Both the position numbers and the translations under genes were made by a program. Below the pieces are notes generated by a model that did not search any database, was not told where the DNA came from, and saw nothing but the letters and a program-made list of their open reading frames with translations. From IMG/VR virus record IMGVR_UViG_3300023235_000008, positions 62,001-126,000 of that record: 64,000 bases of DNA. One strand, given 5' to 3'. Positions 21,467 to 27,064 of this stretch are shown here, one piece after another (position 1 is the stretch's first letter; every line of letters begins with the position of its first letter).

Positions 21467-21773
21467 TAAATTTCGTGAGCTTGGTATTATTCAATACGAA
21501 ACAAAAGTTCATGCCACCGTTAATGCCAAAGGTATCGGATACGAGAAGGTTAGAATCAATAAAGAACTAGTCCTTCAACGAGTAGAAGACGCCGGGTGTT
21601 CCGGTATTAGCCCCCGTGATCCACATATTACCTATACTATTACGTATGGAGATATTCACAGGATTGACGGAATGAATATAGAACGATTAGCACAATCGTA
21701 TGATTTAAATATTGATGGCACACCACGTGCTGTCGGACTCAAACCGGGAAGGAAACCCAAAACAGATGTCTGA
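21447..21773 (+). CDS. Hypothetical protein
   Basis: Overlapping operon ORF. Confidence 0.6.
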   Translation: MKTTLVNKFRELGIIQYETKVHATVNAKGIGYEKVRINKELVLQRVEDAGCSGISPRDPHITYTITYGDIHRIDGMNIERLAQSYDLNIDGTPRAVGLKPGRKPKTDV

Positions 21774-22320
21774 AGATAATAAAAATGAAAAGAAGTCACT
21801 AAACGATAACGGTATGTATCTTTTTATGACCGAAGTTACACAAGCGTCACTTAAACCAGTCATCGAATGGATTATTGAAGAAAATCTTCAAGCCAAGAAA
21901 AAGAAATATATCACACTTATTGTCAATTCACCCGGCGGCGACGTAAATGCTTGTTTTGCATTGATTGATACAATGAAGGGTTCTTCTATCCCTGTCCGCA
22001 CAGTCGGCATTGGCATGATCGCAAGTTGTGGCTTACTTATGTTCATGGCTGGTGAAAAAGGTCACCGTACTCTTACACCGAATACGTCTATCTTGTCACA
22101 TCAATATAGCGGGGGATCACGTGGTAAGGAACACGAACTATTTTCAGTAACAAAAGAGTTTAATCTTACAAGCAGACGATTATTAGATCATTACACTAAG
22201 TGCACTGGTTTATCAGAAAAGAAAGTTCGCAAGAAGTTGTTACCAGAATCCGATGTATGGCTTGATGCCGAAGAAGCATTGGCGCTTGGTATTTGCGACA
22301 AAATAAAGGAAACATATTAA
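21766..22320 (+). CDS. clpP: ClpP-like serine protease subunit
   Basis: VNSPGG, IASCG (catalytic Ser), ILSHQ (His), WLDAEEALALGICD. Confidence 0.9.
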   Translation: MSEDNKNEKKSLNDNGMYLFMTEVTQASLKPVIEWIIEENLQAKKKKYITLIVNSPGGDVNACFALIDTMKGSSIPVRTVGIGMIASCGLLMFMAGEKGHRTLTPNTSILSHQYSGGSRGKEHELFSVTKEFNLTSRRLLDHYTKCTGLSEKKVRKKLLPESDVWLDAEEALALGICDKIKETY

Positions 22321-22724
22321 TGGTTAAAAAGAGTAAAAAAGACAGTGTAACCGCTGGCAATAAGGAAACCTTCGAAGAAACAAAGAAGCGTATTGAAACG
22401 TTGGGGCGTATCGAGCAGATCAAAGACAAAGAACTTGATATTCTTAAAGAAGGAAATGATGGTGAACTAAAGGATTATGAGCCAGACTTTATGCTTGTAT
22501 TCCGTGAAAAGGATGGCACGTGGTATTATGGCTCATCACGTATCCTTGATAACGATAACCACCAAATGAATGGTATGAAGGTTTACGAGGTCAAAGACTT
22601 TGACCGTACATTGGAAGACCTACGTGCCCGTCAAAAGTTTGACATTAGTTTACCGAATATGATTATTTGGAAAGACTATGATAACCAAGACGAGTTGGTT
22701 GGTTGGGCTGATCCGTACGCATAA
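22320..22724 (+). CDS. Hypothetical protein
   Basis: Coupled ORF (TAATG). Confidence 0.6.
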   Translation: MVKKSKKDSVTAGNKETFEETKKRIETLGRIEQIKDKELDILKEGNDGELKDYEPDFMLVFREKDGTWYYGSSRILDNDNHQMNGMKVYEVKDFDRTLEDLRARQKFDISLPNMIIWKDYDNQDELVGWADPYA

Positions 22725-23257
22725 TGATTTCAGCAATCTTAGCCATTGATGAAAACGGGGCTATCGGTAACAAAGGTGCGTTACCGTGGCCCCGTAGTGA
22801 TCACGATATGAAATGGTTTCGCAACCTAACTAAAAATAACAATGTCGTTATGGGGCGAAAGACGTGGGATAGTTTGCCGAGCAAACCCCTGCCGAACCGT
22901 TTAAGTCTGATCGTTTCTAAAACTCTAACACAGCGTGATATTGGACGCAATGAAGCCTATGCGATGGTATTGGGGGATGATTGGAAAAATTTTGTTATTA
23001 ATCTACATCTACGCAACCAACTATCCATCCCGCCTGTTACATGTGACACGTTTATCATAGGCGGGGCTGAAATATATAGACAAACGTTTGATATATGTGA
23101 TAAAATATACCTAACGACATTTAAAGGTGTATTTGAAGCCGATACATATATTACCCATGATCTTGGTCTTCATATTGGTAACTTTGAATGCATTCAGCGA
23201 ATCGAACATCCAGAATGTAAAATGGAAGCGTGGGAACGTATACCAGATTATGAGTAG
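22724..23257 (+). CDS. folA: Dihydrofolate reductase
   Basis: AIGNKGALPW, DMKWF, VVMGRKTWDSLP.KPLPNR, IIGGAEIY, ADTY. Confidence 0.95.
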   Translation: MISAILAIDENGAIGNKGALPWPRSDHDMKWFRNLTKNNNVVMGRKTWDSLPSKPLPNRLSLIVSKTLTQRDIGRNEAYAMVLGDDWKNFVINLHLRNQLSIPPVTCDTFIIGGAEIYRQTFDICDKIYLTTFKGVFEADTYITHDLGLHIGNFECIQRIEHPECKMEAWERIPDYE

Positions 23258-23843
23258 AGAAAGTTTTGACGATACTTGGCTAACAGAAATGCCAGAGAAT
23301 ATAGGCGATTTTGAACTGTTTGATATGTTGGAATACCATATCAAAGATCGCCTAAAACATACCAGTAAAGTATCATTGGGCGATAATTGGTTCAAGATGG
23401 GTAATGAAGTGGTATCCTATTGGTATGAAAAAAATGGTGAAATATTATTAGCAGCAGAATTTGATGTGAAGCCACAATCATATGTTGTCAATTCGGTAGG
23501 AAAAAAATACAAGGGATCAATGCCCTATGCATCTGACCTATACAACCGTGTGTTGAAAGATACTCACAAATCTATTAGAATTATGAGTGATGTTCAATTA
23601 TCCAATGAGGGGTTTAGTATCTGGGAGAGATTGATAGATCAGGGACATTCAATATCCGTGTATAATAAAAACGAACCGGGTAGGTCATTTAAGATTTTAA
23701 ATAAAAATGATCTAAAAAAATATCATCAAGCGGATACAGATTTCCGTAAATATCAATTTATTATTTCGGAAAGCTCATATATAAACGAAACTGCTGCGGT
23801 ATTCGGCACCCGGCGTATGCGTGAATTAACTGGAAGAATATGA
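23250..23843 (+). CDS. GNAT-like hypothetical protein with an N-terminal LTE motif
   Basis: ASDLY...IRIMSDVQLSNEGFSIWERL resembles the GNAT-like module of 29476..32871. Confidence 0.45.
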   Translation: MSRESFDDTWLTEMPENIGDFELFDMLEYHIKDRLKHTSKVSLGDNWFKMGNEVVSYWYEKNGEILLAAEFDVKPQSYVVNSVGKKYKGSMPYASDLYNRVLKDTHKSIRIMSDVQLSNEGFSIWERLIDQGHSISVYNKNEPGRSFKILNKNDLKKYHQADTDFRKYQFIISESSYINETAAVFGTRRMRELTGRI

Positions 23844-23912
23844 ATGTGATTGGTATCCATATGTGTTCAAATGTAGCAAATGCAAACAGACTTATATGTA
23901 CGGATGGTCATA

Positions 23913-24203
23913 ATGTCACTGTTTGAAATCTGTCCATTATGTTGGCGTGTACTAGGAATAGTGAACATAGACGAGCATCACTTGATTCCTAAAACTTTCA
24001 AGGGTAAAGCAAAAGAACCATTACATAAAATATGTCACAGAAAGATACACGCAACCTTTACTGAACGAGAGTTACTAAAACATTATCATACTTGGGAAAG
24101 ACTTAGGGAACATGAGCAAATCCAGACTTTCGTGAAGTGGGTCCAAAAGAAAGACCCCAGCTACTATGACGGAAGCAAAGATTCAAACCGGAGAAGAAGA
24201 TGA
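23913..24203 (+). CDS. Small HNH endonuclease-like protein
   Basis: CPLC...EHHLIPK...LHKICHRKIH. Confidence 0.75.
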   Translation: MSLFEICPLCWRVLGIVNIDEHHLIPKTFKGKAKEPLHKICHRKIHATFTERELLKHYHTWERLREHEQIQTFVKWVQKKDPSYYDGSKDSNRRRR

Positions 24204-24204
24204 C

Positions 24205-24501
24205 ATGAAAATATTACCACGCTATAGAACAGATCAATGGACAAGAGGGGAAGATTTCCCCAACGAGCCGTTTGTGTTTGATGTGCGTAATTGGGACATC
24301 GCTCATACTATGTACCGAATGTTGATGACACCTAAGTTACAACAGGATCGCAATGTAGTCGCAGTATCCTTGCGTGGTATTCCAACCGCTAACGAACTTC
24401 GCTGGTGTGAAAGAGCCGCCAGAAAAGGTAACTTCAGAATAATATGGCTTAGTACAAAAATGAAAGAAACATCAGATGCAGAACTACCTAACAACACTTA
24501 A
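24205..24501 (+). CDS. Hypothetical protein, paralog of 46087..46374
   Basis: Shared [17 protein letters not shown] and [12 protein letters not shown] blocks. Confidence 0.7.
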
Positions 24502-26128
24502 ACACATCATGGACAACGGCGTAGATCGTGGCGATAGAACGGGCACAGGCACACGCTCTGTATTCGCTCACCAGATGCGATTTGATTTGTCAGAAGGCTT
24601 TCCAGCCGTTACAACCAAGAAGCTGGCGTTCAAAGCTGTAAAGAGTGAACTGCTATGGTTCCTAGAAGGGTCTGGTGATGAAAGACGATTAGCTGAAATC
24701 AATGGCACTGAACGCACAATCTGGACTGCTAACGCTGAAGCTGACTATTGGAAACCCAAAGCAAAGTTCGAAGGCGACCTCCAAAAAGTATATGGCTACC
24801 AATGGCGAAAATGGTCAAAATATGATTCTTGGCGAGATTCTGTAACTCTAATAGAACAGGGCACTAAAATTGGTGACGATCAACCATTTTCCTTGGATTT
24901 TGATTTAGAACAAGTAGATTACACAGGTGGTGATGATTTTGTAGGAAAGATTTTTGATACAAATCAATCAGGGCAAATAAAAATTCTTAAAAAACTTGAT
25001 GTGAGAAATGGCAATTCGTATTACCGAGTTCAATTTTTAGAAGGTATCAACACCATCATAGACTGCTCTCGTCCTAACATTCGTTCAAAAACTGTAAAGA
25101 ACCCATATGCCATGACTGCGGCTGAAGGTGCTGGGTGTTATGGAGTAGTCGATAAACGATCAAAATATTTAACATCAGCATATAATATGTGGCTCAATAT
25201 GATGGAGCGGTGTCATGGTGAAAATACTGAGAAGACACTATTTTATAAACAACAAGGTATTTATGTGGATTCTAAGTGGAGATGTTTTAGTAATTTTTAC
25301 AGAGATATTCATGGTTTGGTTGGATTTGACAAATGGGTTATTAACCATTCAAAATATGAATTAGATAAAGATTATTTTGGTAATAAATTTTATGGAATAG
25401 AATCAACTATATTTCTACCTATGTGGTATAATCAATATATTTTACCTAAACATAATAATGATTTGATTATTGCGACCAATAAGAAATCTAATGAAGAATT
25501 CAAATTCACAACACCATCCTTGTTCTATAAACAAAAAGATATTAAAGATACTGATATGGTAAATAGAGCATTCCGTGAACAAAACGGCAATTCTATAAAT
25601 TGGTCATTTAGCAAAAAATCACCGCCAATCGGATATAAATGGAGACAGCAATTTTTTGTAGATCAAATCGCTGATGTCATTGAAAGCATTAAGAATGACC
25701 CTGACAGCCGTAGACATATCGTTACAGCGTATAATCCGGGAGAACTTCAAGATATGGCTCTACCACCGTGTCATATGATCTTTCAATTCTATGTGGCTAA
25801 TGGCAAACTATCATGCCATATGAACCAGCGTTCTTGTGACCTTTTTTTAGGCGTTCCATTCAATATCGCCAGTTATGCTTTACTTACACATATGATTGCT
25901 CAAGTATGCGGGCTTGATGTAGGTGAACTAATCCTGACATTAGGCGATGCTCACATTTATAGCAATCACTTCGATCAAGTCAATGAACAGCTATCACGAG
26001 AACCACAGGATTTACCAACGCTATGGTTGAACCCTGATATTAAAGATATTGATAGTTTCACAATGGATGATATCAAGCTTGAGAACTACAATCCACAGGA
26101 CACTATAAAAGCAAAGATGGCAGTGTGA
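24476..26128 (+). CDS. thyA: Thymidylate synthase ThyA with an in-frame endonuclease insertion
   Basis: DRTGTGT, TTKK, ELLWFL, YGYQWR, DSRR, LPPCH, QRSCD, GDAHIY. It is 550 aa versus ~264 for an ordinary ThyA. Confidence 0.93.
24815..25657 (+). mobile_element. In-frame HNH-like homing endonuclease domain inside thyA
   Basis: W..MMERC...Y...GIYV...W..FSNF...LDKD...NK.Y...T.FLP..YN pattern; visibly AT-richer than its flanks. Confidence 0.7.
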
Positions 26129-26388
26129 CCACCAAAGAAAAACAAGATTTTTGGAACGCATTAAGTGAACCGCAACCGATATCCGATGTATTTCTGGAAC
26201 TTGACCAACTGATATGTGATAAGAATATCAATCCCCATTATCATATGGATATGTGTAATTCAATGGTAGATTATATCAGGAATAAACACAATATCACGGT
26301 GACGATTGAAGAAACGTATGAACCAGAGCGGGATAAAAAACTTATCAGAATCAATTACAATGGATATTGGTATGAACGACGATATTAG
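26125..26388 (+). CDS. Hypothetical protein
   Basis: GTGA overlap with thyA. Confidence 0.5.
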
Positions 26389-26896
26389 TAAAGAAGATTT
26401 CATAGGAGTGTTATCCACCGATATTGGACAGTTTAAGCGCCATAAAATAATAAAAGAAATATGGGTGATTATACAGAGATATCCGAATGTACTGGAAAAT
26501 CCACACACACGCACAACACTAGAAAAAAATCTGGTTGATTATTATGGAATGAAAAATGTTACGTGCTATAGAGATTTTGAGGCACAAGGATACGTATTGA
26601 CATTTCAATGGGATTCACATCATATACCTTATTCTAAATTATGGATAAGCGAATATATAAATGATTATGAAATAAGTGATATACAATGAACTATAATAAC
26701 AAACAATTTACAACAGCATTGATGGAATGCGAAGTAGATTTATTGCGTAAGCTATTAGTCATAGGTGTGGCGGGTATGCCCCCTGCTTCGTTGCATGAAT
26801 GGGCACTTGAGTATCTGTCCGAAGAGGAATTCGAAGATTTTTATTTAACATTCTTTGCCAGCAAATGATAAATACTATATTAAGGAGAGTTATCAG

Positions 26897-27064
26897 ATGG
26901 CTAAAATGAATGAAGAAATGGTTGTGATTAAAGTATCAGAACTAATTAAAGACGATGCTAACGCATCAGCAATTCTGACAGACGATATGCTAGAAGGCGT
27001 AGAAGCTGTAGTTCAAGAACTAGTAGGCGAAGGCAAACTAGTAGAAATCATTAAGGAAGTTTAA
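26897..27064 (+). CDS. Small acidic hypothetical late protein
   Basis: ATAAATA at 26868-26874 and AAGGAG RBS. Confidence 0.6.
   Translation: MAKMNEEMVVIKVSELIKDDANASAILTDDMLEGVEAVVQELVGEGKLVEIIKEV

What the first reader, a model, noticed from the sequence alone, without database searches (positions are those of the whole stretch)
24476..26128. ThyA carrying a ~280-aa HNH-like endonuclease in frame without intron or intein signals
Seen: the insert lies between YGYQWRKW and VDQI, there is no stop, and all ThyA catalytic motifs are intact. No group I P/Q/R/S elements and no terminal His-Asn/Cys-Ser-Thr intein ends were found. The insert is AT-rich and ends in KWRQ, echoing QWRK at the left junction. 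Inference: a homing endonuclease tolerated as a permanent domain in a ThyA surface loop, i.e. a bifunctional, self-mobilising enzyme that avoids any splicing.
Basis: partly seen in the sequence, partly recalled or inferred. Interest (0 to 1): 0.65.

Follow-up and report, generated by a model that had tools for sequence, protein, structure and literature searches.

The report
Homing-endonuclease-like module inside phage ThyA
A salt-lake jumbo phage's only thymidylate synthase gene carries a complete homing-endonuclease-like protein as an in-frame insert in a surface loop, with no sign of an intron or intein. The same arrangement recurs in many other phage ThyA genes, which suggests selfish nuclease genes can invade an essential gene without any splicing.

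Summary
Window 24476-26128 (+) is one 550-aa ORF: ThyA residues 1-113, a 281-aa insert (114-394), then ThyA 395-550. All ThyA catalytic residues are intact. The insert is AT-rich (GC3 23% against 35-45% in the flanks). It gives no Rfam hit, has no intein motifs and shows no Hint fold.

It belongs to PHROG 2081, labelled "HNH endonuclease", whose members are also encoded inside group I introns of Bacillus phage polymerase genes. AlphaFold models it confidently (pLDDT 94.7) as an SH3-like barrel, a helical domain ending in a beta-beta-alpha unit, and an I-HmuI-like DNA-binding domain. The beta-beta-alpha unit has D297-K298-D299...N319, so Lys sits where HNH enzymes have His.

Free-standing proteins of 230-290 aa match the whole insert. 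At least 75 protein clusters (50% identity) are ThyA-insert-ThyA fusions at this same loop, including Bacillus phage Kioshi. The closest ThyA, from a syntenic relative, is 80-86% identical and lacks the insert. On the ThyA tree the insert needs at least 14 gains or losses.

Best reading: a homing-endonuclease-derived element carried unspliced inside ThyA, mobile now or recently. Nuclease activity, lack of splicing and ThyA activity of the fusion are all untested. It is a new variant of a known kind; the nearest precedents are the ShiLan insertion and rps3-LAGLIDADG fusions.

The parts
24476..24814 (+). thyA, N-terminal part (residues 1-113), ending in ...YGYQWRKW
   Evidence: Pfam PF00303 and PDB ThyA chains align to residues 1-117. 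It is 80% identical to the insert-less ThyA of the syntenic relative L006.
24782..24811 (+). Insert-associated substitutions in the left ThyA flank (Q103, K104, Y108, K112)
   Evidence: Position 103 is G in 65/65 insert-less ThyAs but mostly Q/N in insert-bearing ones. Position 108 is V in 58/65 insert-less against Y in 21/34 insert-bearing. The excess identity of the junction-proximal over the distal flank is larger among insert-bearing genes (p 4e-4 on the left, 4e-13 on the right).
24815..25657 (+). In-frame insert (residues 114-394, 281 aa): a complete homing-endonuclease-like protein without its own start or stop
   Evidence: phrog_2081 'HNH endonuclease' E 1.7e-23. The AF2 model of residues 114-387 has pLDDT 94.7 and pTM 0.86. 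Free-standing P0096 aligns end to end with the Kioshi insert, and P0051 aligns to residues 131-390. GC3 is 23%.
24815..24922 (+). N-terminal linker of the insert (residues 114-149)
   Evidence: Conserved among insert-bearing ThyAs (consensus ..Y..W...V.LI.Q....G...PF). Also present in free-standing P0096, P0051, P0121, P0136 and P0177. Block-mean pLDDT is 85-97 over residues 114-153.
24923..25093 (+). SH3/Tudor-like beta-barrel (residues 150-206)
25169..25453 (+). Central helical domain ending in a beta-beta-alpha unit (residues 232-326); putative nuclease core
   Evidence: DSSP on the models: strands 294-297 and 312-315, helix 316-325. Invariant Y236, W239, C246, W268, F271, F274, L296, D297. 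No significant solved-structure match for this part.
25364..25372 (+). D297-K298-D299 motif (Lys where HNH enzymes have the general-base His)
   Evidence: D/K/D are conserved in 112/115, 111/115 and 111/115 ThyA-embedded copies, and in 68/78, 74/78 and 70/76 free-standing copies. hhalign pairs YELDKD with LELDHI of a true HNH_3 protein, but probability is only 0.35.
25430..25432 (+). N319 in the helix of the beta-beta-alpha unit (candidate metal ligand)
   Evidence: N in 96/114 ThyA-embedded and 67/72 free-standing copies. Its position as the equivalent of the last N/H of HNH is an inference from motif order.
25454..25627 (+). C-terminal DNA-binding-like domain (residues 327-384)
25631..25657 (+). 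Conserved tail of the insert (G386-Y-K-W-R390-Q-Q-F-F394)
   Evidence: G386 is 32/34 and R390 is 34/34 in insert-bearing ThyAs; both are absent or not conserved in the 65 insert-less ones. Free-standing P0096 ends with the same Y-R-Y-E-L tail as the Kioshi insert.
25658..26128 (+). thyA, C-terminal part (residues 395-550, VDQI... to the stop), holding the catalytic Cys432
   Evidence: PDB ThyA chains align 394-550 to E. coli 108-264. It is 85-86% identical to L006. The ThyA part of the full-length model superposes on E. coli ThyA with TM up to 0.96.
22724..23257 (+). Dihydrofolate reductase gene (context: its partner enzyme in the thymidylate cycle)
   Evidence: Pfam DHFR_1 E 3e-32. The same gene order is seen in relative L006.

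Best explanation
The insert is a whole homing-endonuclease-type gene that has entered thyA in frame. It consists of a linker, an SH3-like barrel, a D-K-D...N beta-beta-alpha core and an I-HmuI-like DNA-binding domain. It lacks its own start and stop codons and occupies a length-variable surface loop between ...QWRKW and VDQI....

It is translated as part of ThyA and most likely stays in the mature protein as a self-folding domain, leaving the ThyA fold and catalytic residues intact. No RNA or protein splicing would then be needed.

The element spreads, or spread until recently, between phage thyA alleles. The proposed route is endonuclease-triggered recombination during co-infection, which drags short stretches of flanking thyA sequence along.

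Shown here: the anatomy, family membership, absence of intron and intein signals, recurrence at one site in very different ThyAs, patchy distribution, insert-linked flank changes, and conservation of the putative active site.

Inferred: DNA cleavage, the homing mechanism, persistence of the insert in the mature protein, and ThyA activity of the fusion.
For: (1) Anatomy. There is one ORF, with ThyA split at residues 113/395. The full-length AF2 model has pLDDT 92.9 and pTM 0.88, and its ThyA part superposes on E. coli ThyA at TM 0.96.

(2) Family. The insert matches phrog_2081/953/374 'HNH endonuclease'. PHROG 2081 proteins are encoded inside group I introns of Bastillevirinae DNA polymerase genes (PMC11878797). 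Among solved structures the best matches, both weak, are I-HmuI and SH3-like barrels. The top hit is another 564-aa 'thymidylate synthase'.

(3) The insert is a complete gene. Free-standing P0096 (275 aa) covers Kioshi insert residues 118-391 (E 3e-47). In L089 an intact homologue (P0051) survives inside a decayed thyA, of which only the N-terminal ~78 model positions and the last 30 aa remain.

(4) Recurrence. The same site is occupied in Bacillus phage Kioshi ThyA, which is 29% identical overall. There are 32 clusters in the word search. 75 of the top 149 representatives of the profile search are N-insert-C fusions. More are in L055, L113, L128 and L129.

(5) Mobility signals. The syntenic relative L006 has 80-86% identical ThyA parts and no insert. 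The insert needs >= 14 changes on a 99-sequence ThyA tree, 6 of them forced by well-supported branches. P0017 and P0023 have cores only 40-46% identical, but inserts 53-59% identical. In P0017 both junction flanks are 66-71% identical; in P0023 only the right flank is raised (62%) and the left is 32%. In some pairs the insert is more alike than ThyA itself, for example 74% against 63/67%. Insert-specific flank residues and a raised junction-proximal identity are seen. GC3 is 23%.

(6) Selection. D297/K298/D299/N319 and about 15 other insert positions are conserved in embedded and free copies alike. ThyA catalytic residues are invariant. This is the only ThyA, and there is no ThyX, in the 230-kb record.

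(7) No splicing signals. No sizeable alternative-frame ORF lies in the insert.
Against: - No experiment or RNA/protein data exist. All 24 runs that hold this DNA are DNA runs.
- The canonical HNH general-base His is replaced by Lys. No Pfam or NCBIfam nuclease model matches. hhalign to a true HNH_3 protein is not significant. The central domain has no significant solved-structure match. Catalytic activity is therefore uncertain.
- AU tests did not reject two host-tree clades on the insert data (p 0.24 and 0.22), so insert/host incongruence is not formally shown. Repeated loss could explain part of the patchiness.
- No insert-less allele of this same phage was seen in four runs. Contigs cannot show absence.
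- Rfam's group I model is known to miss phage introns (PMC11878797).
Confidence: 0.6

Rival explanations
1. Domesticated domain. The module came from a homing endonuclease but is now a fixed, useful part of ThyA. It might tether the enzyme to DNA or the replication machinery, or attack the thyA of competing phages. It would no longer act as a self-mobilising element, and its patchiness would reflect recombination and loss.
For: - Strong conservation of the insert over 31-64% identity, and a very confident fold.
- pTM 0.88 for the whole protein suggests a fixed orientation relative to ThyA.
- Lys replaces the catalytic His.
- AU tests do not reject co-inheritance for two clades.
- An intron endonuclease that serves phage competition is known (PMC11620839).
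Against: - The closest relative lacks the insert.
- The insert needs >= 14 changes on the ThyA tree.
- The same D-K-D...N signature is kept in free-standing copies that lie in typical homing-endonuclease positions.
- An intact copy survives in a decayed thyA, so its selection does not depend on ThyA.
- The low GC3 points to recent arrival.
Confidence: 0.22
2. An unrecognised self-splicing element: an intein of a new class or an atypical intron. It would be removed after translation or transcription, so the mature ThyA would be of normal size.
For: - In-frame continuity is what an intein needs.
- Non-canonical inteins and hard-to-detect phage introns exist (bioRxiv 10.1101/2025.01.02.630785; PMC11878797).
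- thyA is a classic host of group I introns; L122-L125 and phage LY2 show interruptions elsewhere in the gene.
Against: - There is no conserved Cys/Ser/Thr at either junction, no terminal His-Asn, no TxxH block and no Hint Pfam hit.
- The model shows an SH3-like barrel, a helical domain and an HTH-like domain. No Hint/intein chain is among the listed fold matches.
- There are no Rfam hits at E <= 10.
- Every part of the 843 nt is protein-coding and conserved as protein, which leaves no room for a ribozyme core.
- An intron would not need to stay open and in frame with the downstream exon in more than 100 divergent genes.
Confidence: 0.08
3. The insertion has inactivated ThyA. On this view the gene is a decaying relic that still happens to be open.
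For: One such relic exists elsewhere (L089: truncated thyA around an intact insert-type ORF).
Against: - All catalytic residues are invariant in 31 insert-bearing ThyAs, and the frame is open in all of them.
- The ThyA fold is predicted intact.
- This is the only thymidylate synthase in the record, and it sits next to DHFR.
- The ThyA parts are 80-86% identical to an uninterrupted relative.
Confidence: 0.04

Closest known systems
ShiLan domain in actinobacteriophage DNA methylase genes (Arsenault, Gosselin & Gogarten 2025, PMC11855218)
   Same: Both are homing-type insertions in a conserved phage enzyme gene. [quoted passage not shown]
   Different: In ShiLan the HNH endonuclease is encoded in another reading frame, and the in-frame reading gives a poorly structured loop. 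Here the endonuclease-like protein is itself the in-frame reading and folds with high confidence, and no alternative-frame ORF of note exists. The host gene and the nuclease family also differ.
rps3-LAGLIDADG in-frame fusions in Ophiostomatales mitochondria (Gibb & Hausner 2005, as cited in PMC7902536)
   Same: A homing endonuclease coding sequence is fused in frame to a host protein-coding sequence, without its own intron or intein.
   Different: That case is organellar, uses a LAGLIDADG enzyme, and occurs in a few instances. The present case is a phage ThyA with an internal loop insertion flanked by both halves of an enzyme, is HNH-like, and is found in at least 75 clusters.
PHROG 2081 intron-encoded 'HNH endonucleases' of Bastillevirinae DNA polymerase genes (PMC11878797)
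   Same: It is the same protein family (E 1.7e-23 for the insert; 7e-47 and 3e-47 for free-standing P0096 and P0051). In both, domain databases detect only the DNA-binding parts.
   Different: Those copies sit in loops of self-splicing group I introns with their own start and stop codons. Here no ribozyme is present and the protein is translated within ThyA.
I-HmuI (HNH homing endonuclease of Bacillus phage SPO1; PDB 1u3e)
   Different: Sequence identity is about 10%. The catalytic His of I-HmuI corresponds to Lys here. The N-terminal barrel and the helical domain are not shared. I-HmuI is intron-encoded.
Inteins with HNH endonuclease domains
   Same: Both are in-frame endonuclease-bearing insertions in conserved phage enzymes, thymidylate synthases among them.
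   Different: The insert has no Hint splicing domain and no junction nucleophiles. The thymidylate synthase entry in that survey carries a different InterPro accession (IPR003669). My own knowledge, not tested here, is that this is ThyX rather than ThyA.

Membership tests
Thymidylate synthase ThyA (Pfam PF00303) | Sequence match over the whole domain above the curated cut-off | tested here: met
   355 bits against a 24.3-bit cut-off, in two stretches that together cover profile positions 1-266.
Thymidylate synthase ThyA (Pfam PF00303) | Catalytic Cys and the dUMP/folate-binding residues (E. coli R21, E58, Y94, R126/127, C146, R166, D169, N177, H207, Y209) | tested here: met
   R21, E58, Y106, R412/413, C432, R452, D455, N463, H493 and Y495 are present and invariant in 31 insert-bearing homologues. 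The numbering offset comes from the PDB alignment.
Thymidylate synthase ThyA (Pfam PF00303) | Enzyme activity of the insert-bearing protein | not testable with these tools
   Only the predicted fold could be assessed (TM 0.96 to E. coli ThyA).
PHROG 2081 (phage 'HNH endonuclease', partly intron-encoded) | Significant profile match | tested here: met
   E 1.7e-23, residues 157-382 against profile positions 29-252 of 433. Only the first ~60% of the profile is covered.
HNH / His-Me finger endonucleases | Beta-beta-alpha-metal fold | tested here: inconclusive
   A beta (294-297), beta (312-315), alpha (316-325) unit is predicted. No significant structural match was found for this part.
HNH / His-Me finger endonucleases | General-base His following the Asp at the end of the first strand | tested here: not met
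   That position is K298, and it is Lys in 111/115 embedded and 74/78 free copies.
HNH / His-Me finger endonucleases | Metal-ligand Asp and Asn/His | tested here: inconclusive
   D297 and N319 are conserved in the expected order. The equivalence rests on motif order and on a non-significant hhalign pairing.
HNH / His-Me finger endonucleases | Match to curated HNH models (Pfam HNH, HNH_3 and others) | tested here: not met
   No Pfam or NCBIfam nuclease model matches at E <= 1.
Homing endonuclease gene (functional sense) | Site-specific cleavage of the empty allele and biased inheritance | not testable with these tools
   Only indirect evidence is available: one insertion site shared by ThyAs 29-86% identical, a patchy distribution, and flank signatures.
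Intein | Hint fold with blocks A/B/F/G, N-terminal Cys/Ser, C-terminal His-Asn and a +1 Cys/Ser/Thr | tested here: not met
   The junction positions are variable or non-nucleophilic (residue 114 is S/N/G/D/...; residues 395-396 are V-D). There is no conserved His-Asn, no Hint Pfam hit, and no Hint/intein chain among the listed fold matches.
Group I / group II intron | Ribozyme core detectable by covariance model; interruption of the reading frame | tested here: not met
   No Rfam hit at E <= 10. The frame is open and conserved as protein throughout, in more than 100 homologues. Caveat: Rfam's group I model misses some phage introns.
ShiLan-type unorthodox insertion | Endonuclease encoded out of frame within an insertion that is open in frame | tested here: not met
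   ORFs lying mainly within the insert in other frames are 46-49 aa at most, and were not identified as anything. The in-frame reading is the endonuclease-like protein.

The most novel reading that the evidence does not exclude
Direct in-frame insertion of a whole, self-folding endonuclease into a permissive loop may be a third general way, besides introns and inteins, for homing endonucleases to colonise essential conserved genes. Phage ThyA would be its first large natural example, with at least 75 sequence clusters and hosts from salt-lake jumbo phages to Bacillus phages. The product would be an active bifunctional ThyA-nuclease. Its nuclease core would be a so far uncharacterised Lys-for-His variant of the beta-beta-alpha-metal fold.
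Probability: 0.4. Interest if true: 0.8.

Novelty: new variant of a known kind. Interest (0 to 1): 0.68.

Why it matters
Textbook accounts say a homing endonuclease can sit inside a conserved essential gene only if a self-splicing intron or intein removes it. Here a full endonuclease-type protein appears to be simply tolerated as an extra domain of thymidylate synthase. This has happened, or spread, across many unrelated phages at one and the same loop.

If confirmed, this would have several consequences:
- It would widen the known life styles of selfish nucleases.
- It would explain a class of over-long 'thymidylate synthase' annotations (about 520-600 aa).
- It would point to a permissive insertion site in a well-studied drug-target enzyme.
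- It would expose a very large phage protein family with no curated domain model (36,504 representative proteins at E <= 1e-3). That family's D-K-D...N core may be a new catalytic variant.

Bacillus phage Kioshi, a cultured phage, offers a direct experimental system.

Tried and rejected
- **Group I/II intron.** An Rfam scan of 23500-27000 at E <= 10 found nothing.
- **Intein.** No Hint models, junction residues or fold were found.
- **Target-site duplication ('KWRQ echo').** No direct repeat of 7 nt or more lies at the junctions. I first took WR..VDQI for native ThyA sequence because L006 has GDWRTHYIDQI. Column counts show the tail belongs to the insert.
- **L006 loop as a scar.** I tested whether the 34-aa loop of L006 is a leftover 'mini-insert' (linker plus tail). 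A profile of those segments does not hit it; L006 is not among the hits at E <= 10.
- **L. casei small domain.** I considered equating the site with the 50-aa 'small domain' of L. casei ThyA. I rejected this from the known numbering: that insert lies upstream of Tyr146/Tyr94, in a different loop. This rests on my own knowledge and is only consistent with, not tested by.
- **Insert/host incongruence by AU test.** Not significant for two clades (p 0.24, 0.22). Three further tests did not finish.
- **Homology to true HNH.** hhalign against an HNH_3 protein of the same phage gave probability 0.35.
- **Word search with the insert alone.** It found only one fragment.
- **Closest relatives of the divergent host ThyA of P0017.** None is closer than 51%, so its recipient lineage could not be identified.
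- **ORF upstream of P0096.** This 51-aa ORF looked like a ThyA C-terminus by eye, but BLASTP and the HMM do not support that.
- **RNA evidence.** No RNA run holds the stretch.
- **Empty-site allele.** In four metagenome runs no joint was found, and contigs cannot show absence.
- **In-frame insertion in other host enzymes.** The ten longest non-ThyA hits are tandem copies of the module, not other enzymes.
- **Not done.** The ThyA dimer with the insert could not be modelled (1100 residues is over the limit). 
Full report
**1. The observation**

Window 24476..26128 (+) is a single 550-aa ORF. Pfam and PHROG see thymidylate synthase in two pieces. Solved ThyA chains align to residues 1-117 and 394-550, and only about two residues lie between these pieces in Brucella ThyA.

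With the offset from that alignment (residue 394 = E. coli 108), the catalytic Cys146 is C432. R126/R127, R166, D169, N177, H207 and Y209 are R412/R413, R452, D455, N463, H493 and Y495. All of these, with R21, E58 and Y106, are invariant in 31 insert-bearing homologues.

The insert (residues 114-394, nt 24815-25657) has GC 31.8% and GC3 23.0%. The flanks have GC3 of 45.1% and 34.8%, and the window has 40% GC.

The sequence is not an assembly artefact. Two other IMG/VR contigs are identical over 8.5 kb. Contigs from further salt-lake metagenomes bridge both junctions with no differences.

**2. What the insert is not**

- *Not an intron.* No Rfam family matches 23500-27000 even at E <= 10.
- *Not an intein.* No Hint or intein model matches. 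The junction residues are not conserved nucleophiles, and there is no terminal His-Asn.
- *No hidden gene.* No ORF longer than 49 aa lies mainly within the insert in another frame. A hidden out-of-frame endonuclease of the ShiLan type is therefore absent.
The G-Y-K-W-R-Q-Q-F tail is specific to insert-bearing ThyAs. R390 is 34/34 in these and is not conserved in 65 insert-less ones. The tail also ends the free-standing relatives.

**3. What the insert is**

It matches phrog_2081 (E 1.7e-23) and three further PHROGs labelled HNH endonuclease. According to PMC11878797, PHROG 2081 proteins are encoded within group I introns of DNA polymerase genes of Bastillevirinae phages. InterPro recognises only DNA-binding domains in them.

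No Pfam or NCBIfam model covers the family.

With an alignment of only 31 sequences, AlphaFold2 gives a very confident model: pLDDT 94.7 and pTM 0.86. The model has five parts:

| Residues | Element | Evidence |
|---|---|---|
| 114-149 | Linker | conserved among insert-bearing ThyAs |
| 232-326 | Helical domain ending in strand 294-297, strand 312-315, helix 316-325 | DSSP on the models |
| 386-394 | Conserved tail | |

Foldseek's top solved-structure hit is also I-HmuI, though at E 0.1. In the viral model library the matches are strong, down to E 1e-15. The best is another 564-aa 'thymidylate synthase'. The rest are 180-320-aa phage proteins, most of them without a name in the tables at hand; several of the named ones are labelled homing, HNH or I-HmuI-like endonucleases.

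The beta-beta-alpha unit carries L296-D297-K298-D299 and N319. By order and spacing this mirrors the D-H...N of HNH enzymes, with Lys in the place of the general-base His. The four residues are kept in 96-97% (D, K, D) and 84% (N) of ThyA-embedded copies, and in 87-95% of free-standing copies. Homology to true HNH could not be shown statistically. hhalign against an HNH_3 protein of the same phage pairs YELDKD with LELDHI, but at probability 0.35.

I therefore call it HNH-like and do not file it as an HNH member.

**4. The insert is a whole gene**

Free-standing proteins of 230-290 aa match the module from end to end. P0096 (275 aa) aligns with residues 118-391 of the Kioshi ThyA, at 37% identity and E 3e-47. 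P0096 lies just upstream of a DHFR gene.

P0051 (287 aa) aligns with residues 131-390 of the window protein. It sits in a decayed thyA. An N-terminal fragment covering model positions 1-78 lies in another frame before it, and only the last 30 aa of ThyA follow it. Its ORF has therefore stayed intact while most of the surrounding thyA was lost.

Other relatives lie between replication or repair genes, as free-standing homing endonuclease genes typically do:
- between DNA polymerase I and the clamp loader in Rhizobium phages;
- between exonuclease and D14 genes in Vibrio phage Hades;
- two genes upstream of an intron-split thyA in Bacillus phage LY2.

All of these keep L-D-K-D and the Asn.

**5. 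It is a class, not a one-off**

Bacillus phage Kioshi gp41, annotated 'thymidylate synthase' at 548 aa, has a homologous insert at the same loop. Its ThyA is only about 29% identical overall.

The word search found 32 clusters of ThyA-with-insert, at 31-64% identity in the insert.

A profile of the insert searched against 1.84 billion representatives found 36,504 proteins at E <= 1e-3 and 265 at E <= 1e-30. The 149 newly returned proteins among the 150 listed break down as follows:
- 75 are ThyA(N)-insert-ThyA(C) fusions;
- 7 are fragments of such fusions;
- 67 are free-standing or tandem modules.

The ten longest non-ThyA hits contain no other host enzyme.

Further in-frame cases turned up in L055, L113, a contig binned with a Thaumarchaeota MAG, and a Fictibacillus genome contig. 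The first three were checked and have no stops; in the Fictibacillus contig the gene is one 547-aa ORF.

**6. Evidence for mobility**

*Insert-less close relative.* Locus L006 comes from a syntenic relative with the same order of genes: ClpP-like, a 146-aa ORF, DHFR, a small ORF, thyA and the downstream genes. Its ThyA is 80% (N part) and 85-86% (C part) identical to the window's. It has only a 34-aa loop at the site. No insert-bearing ThyA is that close; their cores are 40-74% identical.

*Variable loop.* Among 65 insert-less phage ThyAs the loop is 2-34 aa long.

*Patchy distribution.* On a maximum-likelihood tree of 99 ThyA cores with the insert columns removed, the insert needs at least 14 gains or losses. 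Six of these are forced by well-supported branches, and none of 500 label shuffles gave as few.

*Chimeric genes.* P0017 and P0023 have ThyA cores only 40-46% identical to the window's, with long branches. Their inserts are 53-59% identical. In P0017 both junction flanks are 66-71% identical; in P0023 only the right flank is raised (62%), while the left flank is 32%.

*Insert more alike than host.* In several pairs the insert is more similar than the highly conserved enzyme around it, for example P0005/P0006 at 74% against 63% and 67%.

*Flank signature.* The excess identity of junction-proximal over distal flanks is larger for insert-bearing than for insert-less genes (left: +11.2 against +2.8 points, p 4e-4; right: -3.6 against -29.3, p 4e-13). 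Specific flank residues go with the insert: G103 is universal without it and mostly Q/N with it, and V108 becomes Y. These could be co-conversion tracts, compensatory changes, or changes that protect the carrier from its own nuclease.

*Limits.* AU tests on the insert alignment did not reject two clades taken from the host tree (p 0.24, 0.22), so strict incongruence is not demonstrated. No empty allele of this very phage was seen.

**7. Is ThyA still functional?**

The full-length model has pLDDT 92.9 and pTM 0.88. Its ThyA part superposes on E. coli ThyA with a TM-score up to 0.96.

The gene is the only ThyA in the 230-kb record, which CheckV rates 65% complete. There is no ThyX, and no second copy of the module. 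DHFR lies 1.2 kb upstream.

The first Met inside the insert is M213, beyond the barrel, so the module is not obviously translated on its own.

**8. Mechanism proposed**

The module is translated as part of ThyA and remains as an extra domain projecting from a surface loop. That loop corresponds to E. coli 102-107. From my own knowledge it is the same loop as the first 'eukaryotic insert' of human TS; this was not tested here.

During co-infection the fusion, through its DNA-binding domains and its D-K-D...N centre, would nick or cut insert-less thyA near the conserved ...YG.QWR.W / DQ... coding sequence. Repair from the insert-bearing allele would copy the module and short flanks. Later decay or recombination would remove it.

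The anatomy, distribution and conservation are shown. Cleavage, homing and the unspliced state are inferred. I put 0.6 on this reading. I give 0.22 to a domesticated, no longer mobile domain, 0.08 to an unrecognised splicing element and 0.04 to an inactivated gene.

**9. Comparison with what is known**

The closest phage precedent is the ShiLan insertion in actinophage methylase genes (PMC11855218). It too is neither intron nor intein and is open in frame. There, however, the HNH is encoded out of frame and the in-frame product is a disordered loop.

In fungal mitochondria, rps3 is in a few instances fused in frame to a LAGLIDADG endonuclease (PMC7902536).

Inteins with HNH domains, and introns in thyA (T4 td, Bacillus phages beta22 and Bobb), use splicing.

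In five full-text searches, and in the eight papers I then read, I found no description of an in-frame endonuclease-type module in ThyA.

Hence: a new variant of a known kind.

Noticed in passing
window 23127-24203: Compared with the syntenic relative L006 (DHFR, one small ORF, thyA), the window has two extra ORFs between DHFR and thyA. One is a 238-aa ORF (23127-23843). The other is a 107-aa ORF (23880-24203) whose CxxC...EHH...HxxxH pattern looks HNH-like by eye. Neither hits Pfam or PHROGs. This may be a second selfish insertion next to thyA.
   Followed up: partly
L089:2763-3956: This is a thyA relic. An N-terminal ThyA fragment (model positions 1-78) lies in one frame. An intact insert-type ORF (P0051, 287 aa) with its own start lies in another. 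After it only the last ~30 aa of ThyA remain. The endonuclease-like gene has stayed intact while most of thyA was lost.
   Followed up: partly
L122-L125 (for example L122:838-2890): These thyA genes are interrupted at a different place, inside the C-terminal part, by about 1.2 kb with a frame change. They look like classical intron-type interruptions. The same gene family is thus targeted by two kinds of element.
   Followed up: no
L084:2489-5465 (Bacillus phage vB_BceH_LY2): A free-standing member of the insert family (246 aa, annotated HNH endonuclease) lies two genes upstream of a thyA. That thyA is itself split by an 'intron-associated endonuclease 1'.
   Followed up: no
P0014, P0022, P0028 (alignment A1 columns ~530-580): Some insert-bearing ThyAs carry a second, unrelated insertion of about 45 aa in another loop, just after the QFYV strand that follows the catalytic Cys.
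   Followed up: no
P0050, P0075, P0079, P0097 and others: Free-standing relatives occur as tandem fusions of two whole modules, or with 2-4 repeats of the SH3-like barrel before one D-K-D core. The barrel thus behaves as a repeatable DNA-reading unit.
   Followed up: no
L129:1551-3697 (Fictibacillus nanhaiensis contig): A Kioshi-type 547-aa ThyA-with-insert sits in a 626-kb bacterial contig. It is followed by what looks like only the C-terminal half of a DHFR (90 aa). The surroundings look phage-derived, but this was not examined.
   Followed up: no
window 21712-22320: This ORF resembles a ClpP-type protease by eye and is conserved in relative L006 (1808-2365). No family scan was run.
   Followed up: no
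whole record (G000, 230,059 bases): The phage is a large, uncultured virus found in many salt-lake metagenomes. 9 runs hold at least half of the sampled words. Three IMG/VR contigs are identical over the 8.5 kb compared.
   Followed up: partly
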